DNA of 64,000 nucleotides, from NCBI GenBank assembly GCA_904063045.1, contig CAJFCJ010000007.1, positions 430,819 through 494,818 on the forward strand, in the 5' to 3' direction. This document shows positions 40,983 to 57,633 of this stretch, one piece after another. Each line of letters starts with the position of its first letter. The first letter of the stretch is position 1. The stretch is from Dimorphilus gyrociliatus (Eukaryota; Animalia; Annelida). The notes beneath the pieces are model-generated. The model was not told the DNA's origin. It ran no database searches and saw nothing but the letters and a program-made list of their open reading frames with translations. A program made the translations under genes and the position numbers.

Positions 40983-43900
40983 TTAGCTATAAAATATAAA
41001 TACCGACCTTCGAAAATCAATAGTTGAAAAAGTGTACAAAAATGGGTTCATTGCGCTATTCAAAGGTAAAACGAATACAGCAATCCAAGCCGAGACAACC
41101 GCCGGTATCTGTACTCCTCCCAAAGCCGCGAAACCAATCAGTATAATAGGGACCCAACACATAAAATCAGTTGCTATTATTAGTACAAGTTTCTTAGCCA
41201 AATCGTATTCATTCCCACTTTTAGTAGAGTTTTTCCCCATTTCGTCCATTGACGACTTCACAACTCCGAAAATTGACACGTAGCTCAAAAATATCACCAC
41301 AAATGATGCTAGATTCAAAACAAGAAATATCAACAAGGAGTACTCCCATCCGGCGACTTTCTTGTTGGACATCTGAAATGGTAAACAAACACCCGTGCGA
41401 CCAAAAAATGATTCTCCAAAATACGAGATCTTTGTTGCGGGAATGATTGTTAGCAGGAAACAAACGAGCCAACCAAAAAGCACAACAATTTTTGCATTTT
41501 TCATTCGAATACCTCCTTTCAATGGAAAATTTATGGCAATCACACGGTCAACTGTGATTGCAGTCAACATAAAGACGCTCACTTCTGACGATAACATTGC
41601 CAAGATACCAGCGAATTGACATAGGGCACTTTCACGCCATGAATCTGCGTGAACAATATATTCACCACGATATTTCATGTCAACAGAGGCGATAATTAGC
41701 ATATAAATGCCCATCATCCAATCAGAAATTCCTAAATTCAATATGAAAAAAGATGATACTCTATGTCTGTCGGTTTTAATTCTCCACGCAACAACAAATG
41801 AATTTCCGATAAAAGCACAAAATCCCAATACCCATATACTAATCTGCAAAGCGTAATTAGCCATAAGGTCTTCGCAACTCGAAAATTCATCAGGCTCTGG
41901 AGTGCACTTTTTCACGTTGGTAGCAATACAACAAAACTTAAATGCATCTGTATTCAAAATCTCAAGGTTCTTTAAAGATGAAAACGCATTCTTACTAACA
42001 TCATTCAACTGATTCTCGATTAAAATTAGATGTTGTATATTCGTGAAAGGATTTAGAAACTCTTGTCTCAAGGTTGATAGAAAATTATTGCTCAAGTCCA
42101 GTCTAACCAATGACCTTAAACCCGTAAATGTATTACTATCTAAAGTCCTCAAATTGTTAAAACTGAGATCCAGCTCGCCCAAGTTCTTTAGATCACTAAA
42201 TGCTAAAGGCTGTACATCACTTATTGAATTTCGACTCAAGTTTAGCTTTATTAGCCAGTGAAACTTTCTTAGCATATCATACTTCAGAACATCAATAGAA
42301 TTATAGGAGAGAACTAGTGCTCTGACTTGCCGCGTTTTTCTTTTAGTATATATCGGAAATGACGTCACATTACTATTCGAACATTCGATAATTTTCCCGC
42401 GACAGCTGCATCCGTCAACGTCGCACAGTGGATCTAAATAATACAACAGTATGCGATATCAAACTTTGATTGTATAGGCTAACATTTTTGTCTTAATAAT
42501 ATTTTACAAGCTAGCGTCATAAAAGACGTCTCAAACATAAAAACATCTTATATTTGAAAACGTACCTAAGTCTTCACAGTAAGTTTCATCATCTCCATAC
42601 TTTGGACAATCTATTTTACCATCACAGACTTCTTCATGATTTATACAAAAATTTCCACCTTTGCACTTGAATAAATCTTAAAAAATCACACAGTTAATGA
42701 CGAATGCGAAGTTTCAGTACTGACTTTAGCTTACTTTCGCAAGTATAGTTCTTACAGCCAACCTCATCTTCCCCTCCCGGACAATCTGTAAAAATGGAAA
42801 CATTTTATCATCTATATAGTGTTCTGCGTATGTTTCAGTATATAAGAAAAAGGAGTATCGACCTTTACTTTCATCACACATCTTTCTATAAGGTATACAA
42901 TAACTCTTTGGACAATGAAACATGCCAGGACATTCAATAGAAGAACAATGCTTCCCTAAGTGAGAACCATCTCGACAAGTTTTTTGTAGGAGAGAACCAG
43001 AGTTTATTTCTGTATCATATATGCAGGCTTTTGATCGATCAAAGCAAAATTCGTGACCTGTTCGACACTGAGATTTGTATGTTTCCATTGGCGAGCAACC
43101 TAATACTTCTTTTGTTTCATTTACTCTCGATTCATATACATCCCATATTGTGAAAACTGCCGTTTCTTTTTCATCCTCTTGAGAAAGACCGGGACAATCA
43201 GCTATTAGGTCCTTTTTCAACTTTGAATCAATACATTTTCCAGAGAAACACAAAAATCCGTTGCACGATCCCTCTGACATTTAAATTTCCCAATTATTTC
43301 CACTTCATTTGTTTTAAATCATTAATAATTGCATGTAAATGTTAACTAAAAATGTTTTGTTCGTTTGGCATATTTGAATCGTGTTCTTACCGCATAGTGT
43401 CGAAGTTTCGTCACTTCCGTCTTTACAGTTATCCTTTAGATCACATACGAGTAGTTTATCTATACACTCTCCATTCGTACACATAAACTCACTGCTTGAA
43501 CATTGTTCATGTACTGTTTACGAAGTGATGAAACAAATTACACTCCGCAATACTGAAATATTCATGAAATATTTAAGTGCATATTTACCGCAATCCTCAT
43601 CACTATTATCTCCGCAATTATCAATAAAGTTACATCTTAGAGAGAGAGATATACACTTTCCATTTTGACATTTGAACTCTGTTTGCCCACATTCTGAATA
43701 TGATTTTGTATTATTAGTCTAAATATCGTCATTAATTTTGTATTGCATGAATTTCTTAATTTAGAATAATAATTACGATTTCCTTGAAGTATAGCTTGAT
43801 ATTAAATTAAGAGAGCACTTACTGCATTGTACTTCATCACTTCCATCTTTACAGTCCTCAATTCCATCACAAAAAAAGTCTGTTAATATACATGACCCAT

Positions 43901-55600: not shown

Positions 55601-57633
55601 ATATTCCAATCGTACATTTTACCACAGTACTTATCAATTCTTGTAGAGGAAGAATCCGGACCGTCAAATAGTTCTGCAAAAAGATTTAATATTTTAAGCC
55701 ACTCCCAATACTTCAAAAGCAAACTTTATATAAATTACCCAGATAATTCGACGAACAATCTCTACCTCCATCTGGGATATTAAACTGGATAAAAGACACA
55801 TTTATCTTGTGATTAGTATCAGTTGTTATCAACCAATCGCAAGTGCTCCTCTCGGATTTCTGATCCACCTCAAAGCTACCACATTTTGACGTAAATGATC
55901 TTTTAGTCCCGCAACCAGAATTCCCAATTCCCAAACCACAAGCTAATGAAAATAAGTTCAATAAAACACATATTCTCATAACAGGCAGTCTTACCTTGCT
56001 GTTCATATTCAATAACAAATCCTCCGAAGTGTCTCGATTCGTCAGTAGCAAATATAATTTTTGCGTAGTTCGTTTGACTACTGAAAGGTTCCAACCTTTT
56101 GCTATTAAAACTCTCTTTTGAATCACATGTTTTATCCAACAAGACCTCATTCGTTAGTCCGTCTTCTATCTTTAAATAATCGTATCGACAGTTTTTATCT
56201 TCTTCTAGATCTAAATCTTTAATGCTGCATCGACATTATCAAATTAGAAGGAAAAATTGAATTTTAAACATGTTAAGTAAAGTTATATTTCATTTTATAT
56301 AAAATTACTAAACCATTTCGTTTTCATATTAAATCGTCAAATCAAATCATTCAAAAAAATTTTTATATCTAAATCTATCTATAAAAATCATACGTGAAAG
56401 AAATAGTTGTTCCTTGAGGAGCTGTCACATTCCATATACATCTTACATTCGCTGGATAGAGTTTTGGGAACAGTGGTGATTTTATCTCGCCGTTTGTCGA
56501 TATCAAATTCGTTTCACCGCAATATGTCCAAAATCCTTCTTTAGGTTCTAATAAACAAACAATCAATATCATTCTTATTTAAATGCTGCCTATTCACTCC
56601 ATTAACCTTTGTATTGACATCGATCTCCAACGGTTCCTTCTTTACAGATACACTCAAACTCATTTTCACCACCAACATAAATACATGATCCATTATTTTT
56701 GCAAGGTGAAGAATCGCACGCCAAAGTTCCTAAAAAAAGACATGATCTTCTATATTAATTGTAATACGCCCTTCCGCCAATTATAGTTATTACGTTCGCA
56801 AATGAATCCTTGGATTTCTTTCTCCATATTAATATCGCAATAATAGTCTACCCAAGCATAACGAGGTATAGTTGGCTTCACACCTGGAACCCACCATAGG
56901 TAGTTAGTAAGCAAAAGACAATTTTCTTTTCCTCCTTTGTTATCTGGTTCTCCTTCAAACCACTCATGCCACGGAGATGAAAGTATAGGCATAGAGGATC
57001 CGTCTTCCCACTTCCATTTTCCTTCTACAATTAATTAATGTTTCATATTGCAATTTATTCATTTCTATATTTTGAATTTTGATTAAAAGTGAACCTTCTT
57101 TTTCATCATTTCCTCCAATTGCAAGAGTTAAAACTCTTCTTTGAAGAACTCGATCCGAAATGTAATTAAATTCACTTAAAGTATTCAAACTAACAAGCAA
57201 AGCTCCCTTTTCTTTACACAATTTTCTTGCTGCATATGCAGTAACTCCTTGATGAAATAGTTTATACTGATTTCCATGATAAGAAACCCAATCATCGACA
57301 ATAACACCGTCTTGTAAATAGGAGAAAGAAACAATGATAGTATCAAAATATATTTTACCACTGTATTTCTATAAATAAAAGAACCGTTTTTTCCAAAATT
57401 TATACCTTTGCATTCCTTAAAAAAATCGTAACAACAATTTTCATATTTGTCGCAGTTGTCATTGCAGTAACAAGGTTTTCCAGGAAAGTAGGATTCGGTA
57501 CATCGACCTTTACATGAATCCTCTTGAGATAGACTTTCCCCTGTATCAAGTTTTAAGTTATTTACAAAATTAGAATAAAGAAAACTTACCTACCAAGAAA
57601 AGTGAAAACGACTAAAGTTATAATCCGAGACAT
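49607..57633 (-). CDS. GRL101-type LRR-containing GPCR, copy B (same architecture as copy A)
   Basis: ATG 57633 ([19 protein letters not shown]), SMB exon ([29 protein letters not shown]), then the same domain order as copy A. 7TM ends in NPILY with a distinct tail ([20 protein letters not shown]). The exact stop is uncertain. Confidence 0.9.
49776..53043. repeat. Identical tract 1, copy B
   Basis: Partner of 41044-44311. Confidence 0.92.
56146..57348. repeat. Near-identical tract 2, copy B
   Basis: Partner of 47523-48725. Confidence 0.9.

What the first reader, a model, noticed from the sequence alone, without database searches (positions are those of the whole stretch)
40983..57633. Tandem giant GPCR pair is a mosaic: identical signalling core, diverged recognition ectodomain
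Seen: the copies alternate between identical and diverged blocks. Tract 41044-44311 equals 49776-53043 (7TM, LRR, LDLa, end of the last lectin domain, introns included). Tract 44312-47522 vs 53044-56145 (CUB1 end to CUB5 and lectin 2/3) is strongly diverged, with unalignable introns. Tract 47523-48725 is again near-identical to 56146-57348, and the SMB/signal exons diverge again. Both internal breakpoints fall inside exons. The offsets (8732, 8623) differ by 109, exactly the length difference of the diverged blocks. Inference: an old duplication is being repeatedly homogenised by gene conversion except over the CUB/lectin block. That would give two receptors with one activation module but different ligand or carbohydrate recognition surfaces, as in some immune and chemosensory receptor families.
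Basis: partly seen in the sequence, partly recalled or inferred. Interest (0 to 1): 0.82.

Follow-up and report, generated by a model that had tools for sequence, protein, structure and literature searches.

The report
Gene-converted tandem pair of giant receptors
Two neighbouring, expressed genes for very large hormone-receptor-like proteins are an ancient duplicate pair in which two stretches were recently copied from one gene onto the other; this is a real, clean and ordinary example of gene conversion.

Summary
Window 41044-44311 equals 49776-53043 exactly (3268 bp, six introns included). 47523-48725 differs from 56146-57348 at 9 sites. The 3.2 kb between them is only 55% identical in protein. 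There, synonymous sites are saturated and intron sequences are no more alike than shuffled ones, yet all 12 intron positions and phases are kept.

Both genes lie on the minus strand, have 25 exons and are intact (2058 and 2093 aa). They are LGR/RXFP1-type GPCRs with an SMB, lectin-like, EGF, CUB, LDLa, LRR and 7TM layout.

Public short-read contigs support the identity. A DNA contig of exactly 3268 nt matches the tract. RNA contigs from a separate 2017 study fork at both tract ends. Both copies are transcribed and spliced. The assembly holds no third donor.

Best reading: an ancient tandem duplication with at least two recent interlocus gene conversion events. The claim that selection shields the CUB/lectin block is untested; divergence alone would block conversion there. 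The LRR domain, the usual ligand site of such receptors, lies in the identical tract, and the cytoplasmic tails differ. Other tandem LGR pairs in this genome carry similar tracts.

This is a new member of a known kind, of moderate interest.

The parts
40983..48987 (-). Gene A: 25 exons, 2058 aa. Layout: signal peptide, SMB, lectin-like 1, EGF, 5 CUB, lectin-like 2 and 3, 5 LDLa, LRR, 7TM, short tail.
   Evidence: Most introns come from RNA contig joints; the rest are GT..AG introns that keep the frame. The spliced frame has no internal stop. Exon-level Pfam hits: 7tm_1, LRR_8, Ldl_recept_a, Lectin_C, CUB, EGF, Somatomedin_B.
49607..57633 (-). Gene B: 25 exons, 2093 aa, same architecture, long C-terminal tail.
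   Evidence: Introns homologous to A's at the same positions and phases; open frame. B-specific letters appear in spliced RNA contigs of X3 and X4.
41044..44311 (-). Tract 1, copy A: TM1 to TM7 (up to NPxxY), LRR, 5 LDLa, lectin-like 3 and the end of lectin-like 2, with six introns. Identical to copy B.
   Evidence: 0 mismatches in 3268 bp. A DNA contig of run X1 is exactly 3268 nt long, and the 1552 nt of it that were laid carry no other letters. An X2 RNA contig of 2680 nt equals the tract's exonic length.
49776..53043 (-). Tract 1, copy B.
   Evidence: these are the only two copies in the 77.9 Mb assembly.
44312..47522 (-). Diverged block, copy A: C-terminal half of CUB1, CUB2 to CUB5, most of lectin-like 2 (819 residues, 12 introns).
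   Evidence: 54.9% aa identity to B; dN 0.36; 59% of fourfold sites differ; introns score like shuffles. It forms a separate X1 contig, 44282-47552.
53044..56145 (-). Diverged block, copy B.
47523..48725 (-). Tract 2, copy A: lectin-like 1, EGF, N-terminal half of CUB1, four complete introns and part of the intron after the SMB exon. Differs from B at 9 sites (3 aa changes).
   Evidence: In the read contigs both letters are seen at 48611-48674, but only B's letters at 48256-48417.
56146..57348 (-). Tract 2, copy B.
48726..48987 (-). Diverged 5' end of A: signal-peptide exon, SMB exon and part of the intron after it. About 64% aa identity to B; the upstream regions do not align.
57349..57633 (-). 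Diverged 5' end of B.
40983..41043 (-). Diverged C-terminal tail of A (19 codons from NPxxY onward, then the stop).
49607..49775 (-). Diverged C-terminal tail of B (55 codons from NPxxY onward, lysine-rich, then the stop).

Best explanation
An ancient tandem duplication produced two head-to-tail genes for giant LGR-type (relaxin-receptor-like) GPCRs. Since then, non-reciprocal recombination between the neighbours (interlocus gene conversion) has overwritten two stretches of one copy with the other's sequence. One event was very recent and covers 3268 bp (LDLa, LRR and 7TM, introns included). A somewhat older one covers about 1.2 kb (first lectin-like domain, EGF, half of CUB1). The 3.2 kb CUB/lectin block between them, the SMB and signal exons, the promoters and the cytoplasmic tails escaped and keep the old divergence.

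Shown here: the mosaic, its read support, the intactness and transcription of both genes, the saturation of neutral sites in the block, and the lack of a third donor.

Inferred: the mechanism (conversion), that there were at least two events, and the functional outcome. That outcome would be two receptors sharing one LRR/LDLa/7TM activation unit while differing in the distal CUB array and in the tail. Whether the block is shielded by selection or simply by being too diverged to recombine is open; I favour the mechanical barrier, with selection possible.
For: Exact and near-exact tracts with step-like borders inside exons.

The block is ancient. Protein identity is 54.9%, dN is 0.36, and 59% of fourfold sites differ. 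The NG86 estimate of dS fails or exceeds 1 in most segments. All 12 intron pairs are no more alike than shuffles (z from -1.9 to 1.6). Yet all 12 intron positions and phases are conserved and both frames are open.

Introns inside tract 1 are identical too, so protein-level constraint cannot explain the identity.

The tracts differ in age: 0/3268 vs 9/1203 differences.

There is no other locus in the 77.9 Mb assembly matching the block's CUB or lectin exons, and only two copies of tract 1 exist. The next LGR is 43% identical.

Read support:
- The X1 DNA contigs break exactly at the tract borders (3268-nt contig; block contig 44282-47552 with 30-nt overlaps).
- An X2 RNA contig from another study ends at 44311, and its 2680 nt equal the exonic length of tract 1. 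That places both forks in independent data.
- The assembly keeps paralogue differences in tract 2, so its polishing did not homogenise repeats across the board.

Other tandem LGR pairs in the same genome have 0.5-1.8 kb tracts of 97-99.9% identity beside regions that do not align. Conversion therefore looks common here.
Against: No long reads or raw reads could be laid; only Logan contigs were available. Those contigs pop bubbles: at 48256-48417 only B's letters survive. A few hidden differences inside tract 1 therefore cannot be excluded.

Only 1552 of the 3268 bases of tract 1 were laid directly.

The X1 contig depths (771 for tract 1, 521 for tract 2, 298 for block A) do not fit a plain 2:2:1 ratio. 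The tool itself warns that contig depth is not copy number.

X1 may be the assembly's own sample, and X2 may come from the same laboratory strain.

No sister-species locus was available, so no region-by-region tree could be made.
Confidence: 0.8

Rival explanations
1. Assembly or polishing artefact. The two real copies differ somewhat across tract 1, but the assembler or polisher wrote one consensus into both places.
For: Exact identity over 3.3 kb is what collapsed-and-refilled repeats look like. A's letters at five tract 2 sites (48256-48417) appear in none of the four runs' contigs, so the assembly may hold local errors. Logan contigs pop bubbles, so they cannot prove the absence of variants.
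Against: The X1 contig for the tract is unbroken, exactly 3268 nt, and ends at the same bases as the assembly's identity. RNA contigs of three runs from two studies show no other letter across the tract's exons and fork exactly at its borders. The same assembly preserved 9 paralogue differences in the 99%-identical tract 2, and four of them are confirmed as two alternative contigs. Even if a few differences were hidden, the step from above 99% identity to saturation would remain.
Confidence: 0.07
2. A recent whole-gene duplication followed by replacement of the middle block (and the ends) of one copy. The replacement sequence would come from a distant paralogue or a diverged introgressed allele that is now lost or not assembled.
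For: It would give the same mosaic. The depth of tract 1 in X1 (771, against 521 and 298) hints at sequence not accounted for by two copies.
Against: No third locus matches the block exons anywhere in the assembly. Four separate regions (tail, block, SMB and signal exons, promoter) would each need replacing, whereas two conversions of the tracts suffice. Tract 1 and tract 2 differ in age, which a single recent duplication does not predict.
Confidence: 0.07
3. False tandem duplication. The two 'copies' would be two very different haplotypes of a single gene, laid side by side by the assembler.
For: Highly heterozygous regions can be assembled this way. Baseline depth could not be measured.
Against: The 0.6 kb junction (A's promoter and signal exon next to B's tail and stop) is unique, ordered sequence. 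Alleles whose introns are saturated while their neighbours are identical would themselves need explaining. X1 shows both tract 2 variants at similar depth (290 and 242) and the shared part at about their sum (521), though two alleles of one locus would give the same figures. Other tandem LGR pairs show the same pattern.
Confidence: 0.03

Closest known systems
Interlocus (ectopic) gene conversion between tandem paralogues with a region that escapes it. Examples from my own knowledge: human RHD/RHCE, red/green opsin genes, gamma-globin genes. General survey of such signals in human segmental duplications: PMC3790853 (listed; only its title and the start of its abstract were seen).
   Same: Old duplicates with sharply bounded tracts of near-identity that include introns, breakpoints unrelated to exon borders, several events of different age, and a segment that stays diverged.
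   Different: The genes involved are uncharacterised giant LGRs of an invertebrate. One tract is long (3.3 kb) and shows no difference at all. There are no population or sister-species data to show recurrence or selection.
Type C LGRs: the relaxin receptor RXFP1 (PDB 7tmw) and molluscan GRL101-type receptors
   Same: A rhodopsin-class 7TM preceded by LRRs and LDLa modules. RXFP1 is the best solved match (E 1.5e-83).
   Different: Five LDLa modules, plus about 1150 extra N-terminal residues (SMB, lectin-like, EGF, five CUB, two more lectin-like domains). The ligand is unknown.
Uncharacterised giant CUB/lectin/EGF/LDLa/LRR/7TM proteins of hemichordates (Glandiceps talaboti XP_077983118.1, Ptychodera flava XP_070532232.1) and a crinoid (Antedon mediterranea XP_071964993.1)
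   Same: The same set of domain families ending in LDLa, LRR and 7TM. The crinoid protein showed no Lectin_C hit. They are 44-46% identical over the LRR-7TM exon.
   Different: No SMB domain was seen in those proteins, and one also has F5/8 type C domains. They come from different phyla, so they are family relatives rather than close orthologues. Whether they form converted pairs is unknown.
Variable/constant gene layouts (clustered protocadherins, UGT1A, insect Gr28b/Gr39a; from my own knowledge)
   Same: The outcome is alike: several receptors share one identical membrane and signalling part but differ in an N-terminal part.
   Different: In those families the sharing comes from splicing onto one set of constant exons. 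Here the constant part is physically duplicated and kept identical by recombination. The extreme N-terminus is partly identical too, and the tails differ.

Membership tests
LGR type C / GRL101-like GPCR | Rhodopsin-class 7TM domain | tested here: met
   PF00001 7tm_1, E 7.6e-29, full-length match 1-260 on window:40986-42458:-.
LGR type C / GRL101-like GPCR | Leucine-rich repeat ectodomain directly before the 7TM | tested here: met
   LRR_8 at E 4.4e-21 in the same exon. RXFP1, FSHR, LHCGR, TSHR and LGR4 are the top solved matches.
LGR type C / GRL101-like GPCR | LDLa module(s) N-terminal to the LRRs (this distinguishes type C) | tested here: met
   Ldl_recept_a hits in five successive exon-level pieces, E from 1.1e-11 to 5.9e-4. 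The weakest scores 20.4 bits, below the 24.1 cut-off.
LGR type C / GRL101-like GPCR | Activated by a relaxin- or insulin-like peptide | not testable with these tools
   No ligand information.
Interlocus gene conversion tract | Paralogue identity in the tract far above that of the flanks, at neutral sites (introns, synonymous sites) as well | tested here: met
   0/3268 and 9/1203 differences with introns included, against saturated fourfold sites and shuffle-level introns in the block.
Interlocus gene conversion tract | Abrupt borders unrelated to exon or domain borders | tested here: met
   Borders lie inside two exons, inside the NPxxY codons and inside an intron.
Interlocus gene conversion tract | The identity is real in reads, not only in the assembly | tested here: met
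   Contigs of one DNA run and three RNA runs from two studies reproduce the tract and its forks. The limit is that these are contigs, not raw or long reads, and only part of tract 1 was laid.
Interlocus gene conversion tract | Trees disagree between regions when an outgroup species is added (tracts group by species, flanks by paralogue) | not testable with these tools
   The closest relatives found are 55-58% identical.
Carbohydrate-binding C-type lectin | C-type lectin fold | tested here: inconclusive
Lectin_C at E 2.7e-6 for the first half of lectin-like domain 2 only. Domains 1 and 3 gave no Pfam hit at exon level.
Carbohydrate-binding C-type lectin | EPN or QPD motif plus WND motif (Ca2+ and sugar site) | tested here: not met
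   Read from the translations. Domain 1 has EPD and WVD, the same in both copies. Domain 2, in the block, has QPT and no WND, in both copies.

The most novel reading that the evidence does not exclude
The pair may be one visible case of a genome-wide habit. In this animal's very large LGR family, tandem paralogues would be kept identical over an LDLa/LRR/7TM cassette by recurrent conversion while other ectodomain modules are free, or selected, to diversify. That would be a recombination-based counterpart of the variable/constant layout of protocadherins or immune receptors. Three other tandem LGR pairs checked here also carry sharply bounded near-identical tracts, but their tracts cover different gene parts, and nothing yet shows selection.
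Probability: 0.12. Interest if true: 0.6.

Novelty: new member of a known kind. Interest (0 to 1): 0.36.

Why it matters
This is a clean, read-supported example of interlocus gene conversion in a compact invertebrate genome. One 3.3 kb tract has no difference at all, directly beside sequence whose neutral sites are saturated.

Practical consequences:
- The two genes cannot be told apart by short reads over 4.5 kb, so expression and variant calls there are ambiguous.
- Trees built from the 7TM/LRR part will make an old duplication look new.

Biologically, it defines two intact, expressed giant LGRs that differ only in a five-CUB/lectin-like block, the SMB end and the cytoplasmic tail. They form a natural domain swap for asking what the distal ectodomain and the tail do in this uncharacterised receptor family, which also occurs in hemichordates and echinoderms.

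It does not by itself reveal a new mechanism.

Tried and rejected
1. Depth test for copy number. All runs were served only as Logan contigs, so depth is one figure per contig. The 771: 521: 298 figures do not settle copy number, and GC content (35.2% vs 32.6%) does not explain them. The point is left unexplained.

2. Identity gradient next to the 44311 border as a trace of older, longer conversions. Rejected. The exon 44312-44637 is 83% identical, but the intron only 330 bp from the border is already at shuffle level. The exon's identity therefore reflects protein constraint.

3. dN/dS for diversifying selection. dS is saturated: NG86 fails in most segments and YN00 fails outright. Only 'dN/dS clearly below 1 on average' can be said.

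4. Third-donor search. Block exons match only A and B in the assembly.

5. Dating with a related species.
   - The HMMER search of 1.84 billion representatives found nothing above 58% identity.
   - The nearest relatives (sample ERZ25072999) are listed without DNA.
   - The other is a 3.6 kb Logan contig at 55% identity.

6. Earlier-findings search by words gave nothing. The literature search for this architecture found no description of such a pair.

7. Lectin-like domains 1 and 3, and the CUB domains split by introns, therefore rest on exon-level hits and on reading the motifs.
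Full report
OBSERVATION

A second tract, 47523-48725 vs 56146-57348, has 9 mismatches. BLASTN finds only five short patches of 76-82% identity between the two middle blocks. A MAFFT profile in 100-bp windows drops from 100% to 45-70% at both inner borders, and to background outside the genes. 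The window holds no other long repeat. The whole 77.9 Mb assembly holds only these two copies of tract 1.

THE GENES

Both genes are on the minus strand. I built exon models from two sources. The first was RNA contig joints with GT..AG ends. The second was the only frame-keeping GT..AG introns between conserved coding segments. Each gene has 25 exons and an open frame:
- A runs from the ATG at 48987 to the stop at 40983 (2058 aa).
- B runs from the ATG at 57633 to the stop at 49607 (2093 aa).

These joined models were used only inside scripts.

Exon-level Pfam scans give Somatomedin_B, EGF, CUB (several), Lectin_C, five Ldl_recept_a, LRR_8 and a full-length 7tm_1. The best solved relative of the LRR-7TM exon is the relaxin receptor RXFP1 (7tmw, E 1.5e-83), followed by FSHR, LHCGR, TSHR and LGR4. 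They are therefore type C (LDLa-bearing) LGRs with a very long extra N-terminal array.

A search of 1.84 billion representative proteins found no close orthologue; the best is 58%, on fragments. It did find proteins of 1700-2100 aa with the same domain families (one lacks a Lectin_C hit) at 44-46% identity. Their sources name them as uncharacterised proteins of two hemichordates and a crinoid. The architecture is therefore old and unstudied, not unique to this animal.

AGE OF THE PARTS

In the block (819 residues) the proteins are 54.9% identical. Across 845 aligned codons dN is 0.36. Of the fourfold sites, 59% differ, which is near saturation for this AT-rich genome. Nei-Gojobori dS fails or exceeds 1 in most segments. 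All 12 intron pairs of the block keep position and phase. Their sequences, however, align no better than shuffled ones, with z between -1.9 and 1.6.

This is what an ancient duplicate pair under purifying selection looks like. Faster protein evolution cannot produce it, because it does not erase introns.

Tract 1, by contrast, is identical through six introns. Tract 2 has 9 differences in 1203 bp. With 0/3268 against 9/1203, the two tracts cannot be the same age. By my calculation the chance that all 9 fall in tract 2 is about 7e-6; it is 5e-3 if only the four read-confirmed differences are counted. At least two events are needed.

IS THE IDENTITY REAL?

Only Logan contigs were available, so depth and long-range linkage could not be tested. 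I laid four runs on 42760-48750.

Run X1 is DNA and possibly the assembly's own sample. It yields:
- one contig of exactly 3268 nt, whose right half lies on 42760-44311 without any other letter;
- a separate contig on 44282-47552, which is the A block plus 30-base overlaps, as a k=31 graph gives at a fork;
- a tract 2 contig;
- at 48581-48704, two alternative 124-nt contigs carrying A's and B's letters.

Runs X2, X3 and X4 proved to be RNA, since their contigs skip introns with GT..AG ends on the minus strand.

X2 comes from a different study (2017) and carries a different organism label. Its contig of 2680 nt ends exactly at 44311, and an A-specific contig starts at 44282. The figure 2680 is exactly the exonic length of tract 1 (3268 minus introns of 132, 58, 77, 117, 75 and 129 nt). 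On that count its left end falls at 41044 as well; that end lies outside the stretch laid and was not seen directly.

In X3 and X4 the contig that crosses 44311 continues with letters that are all B's, while other contigs carry A's block without any difference. So both genes are transcribed and spliced, and the borders are reproduced outside the assembly.

Limits on this evidence:
- Logan contigs pop bubbles. At 48256-48417 only B's letters survive in all four runs, so A's letters there are either popped or are assembly errors.
- Only the right half of tract 1 was laid directly.
- X2 may come from the same laboratory strain.
- The X1 depth figures (771 for tract 1, 521 for tract 2, 298 for block A, 290 and 242 for the two variants) exceed 2:1 for tract 1. 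GC content does not explain this, and the tool warns that contig depth is not copy number. I leave it unexplained.

MECHANISM

An old pair has two young tracts whose borders ignore exon limits. The assembly holds no third copy of the block's CUB or lectin exons, and the next LGR is only 43% identical. Interlocus gene conversion between the tandem neighbours is the economical explanation.

The alternative is a recent duplication followed by replacement of the tail, the block, the SMB end and the promoter from an unseen donor. It needs more events and a donor that is not there.

A false duplication of two haplotypes fits poorly. The junction between A's start and B's stop is ordered and unique. 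The same pattern also occurs at other loci.

CONTEXT IN THE GENOME

The LRR-7TM exon matches at least 87 places in the assembly, from 835 first-look candidates. I cut out four other tandem pairs. Each has one tract of high identity beside sequence that does not align at all:
- 99.7% over 986 bp (C34 pair);
- 99.4% over 1017 bp (C5 pair near 537 kb);
- 97.4% over 1823 bp (C21 pair);
- 95.9% over 1148 bp, in inverted orientation (C5 pair near 265 kb).

In two pairs the border lies inside the LDLa/LRR/7TM exon. The 3' part of that exon is 99.6-99.9% identical, while whole-exon protein identity is only 59-83%. Conversion between tandem LGRs is therefore frequent here. That makes the present case less singular, and it leaves open whether there is a preference for particular gene parts.

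The identical tract includes the LRR domain, where LGR hormones bind. It also includes the LDLa modules, which in RXFP1 take part in activation (established knowledge of that family). The two receptors therefore most likely share their primary ligand site and activation unit.

What differs is the distal array (half of CUB1 through CUB5, and lectin-like domain 2), the SMB end, the promoters and the cytoplasmic tail. The tails part within the NPxxY motif: A ends 16 residues after it, while B goes on for 52 residues with a lysine-rich stretch. Signalling or trafficking may therefore differ too.

The lectin-like domain in the block lacks the canonical sugar-site motifs in both copies. Different carbohydrate recognition is thus not indicated.

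Nothing here tests whether selection shields the block. Sequences this diverged cannot pair, so they stay outside conversion without any selection.

VERDICT

The gene-conversion inference is well supported. The selective and functional story is plausible in outline but untested, and partly overstated. This is a new, tidy member of a well-known kind of event, in an uncharacterised receptor family.

Noticed in passing
G000 contigs C34:104842-112295, C5:537190-544264, C21:925397-934932, C5:265409-275745 (loci L023-L031): Four other neighbouring LGR gene pairs each carry one tract of 95.9-99.7% identity (about 1-1.8 kb) beside sequence that does not align. In the C34 and C5:537k pairs the border lies inside the LDLa/LRR/7TM exon.
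   Followed up: partly
window 41044-44311 vs 44282-47552 vs 47523-48610: In DNA run X1 the contig depth of tract 1 (771) is about 2.6 times that of block A (298), whereas tract 2 (521) is about 1.75 times. GC content does not explain it. Possible causes are an unassembled extra partial copy, copy-number variation in the culture, or noise in contig depth.
   Followed up: partly
window 48256, 48258, 48259, 48262, 48417: The letters the assembly gives copy A at these five sites appear in none of the contigs of the four runs; only B's letters do. They may be popped bubbles or small errors in the assembly. If they are errors, tract 2 differs at only 4 sites.
   Followed up: partly
whole genome G000: The LRR-7TM/LGR family is very large: at least 87 scored matches at E<=1e-10 from 835 first-look candidates in a 78 Mb genome.
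   Followed up: no
proteins P0011, P0013, P0030: Uncharacterised proteins of 1700-2100 aa in two hemichordates and a crinoid combine CUB, EGF, LDLa, LRR and 7TM (C-type lectin too in the two hemichordates), 44-46% identical in the LRR-7TM part. This points to an old, unnamed subfamily of giant LGRs.
   Followed up: partly
sample ERZ25072999: The closest relative found (58% identity) has near-identical 281-291 aa LRR-7TM open frames on four different large contigs. This may be several copies, or haplotypes, of the same gene type.
   Followed up: no
window 45813-45968 vs 54555-54600: One homologous intron is 156 nt in A and 46 nt in B. This single difference accounts for nearly all of the 109-base offset shift.
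   Followed up: yes
runs X2, X3, X4: Runs listed as '?' or 'DNA?' are in fact RNA: their contigs skip every intron with GT..AG ends.
   Followed up: yes
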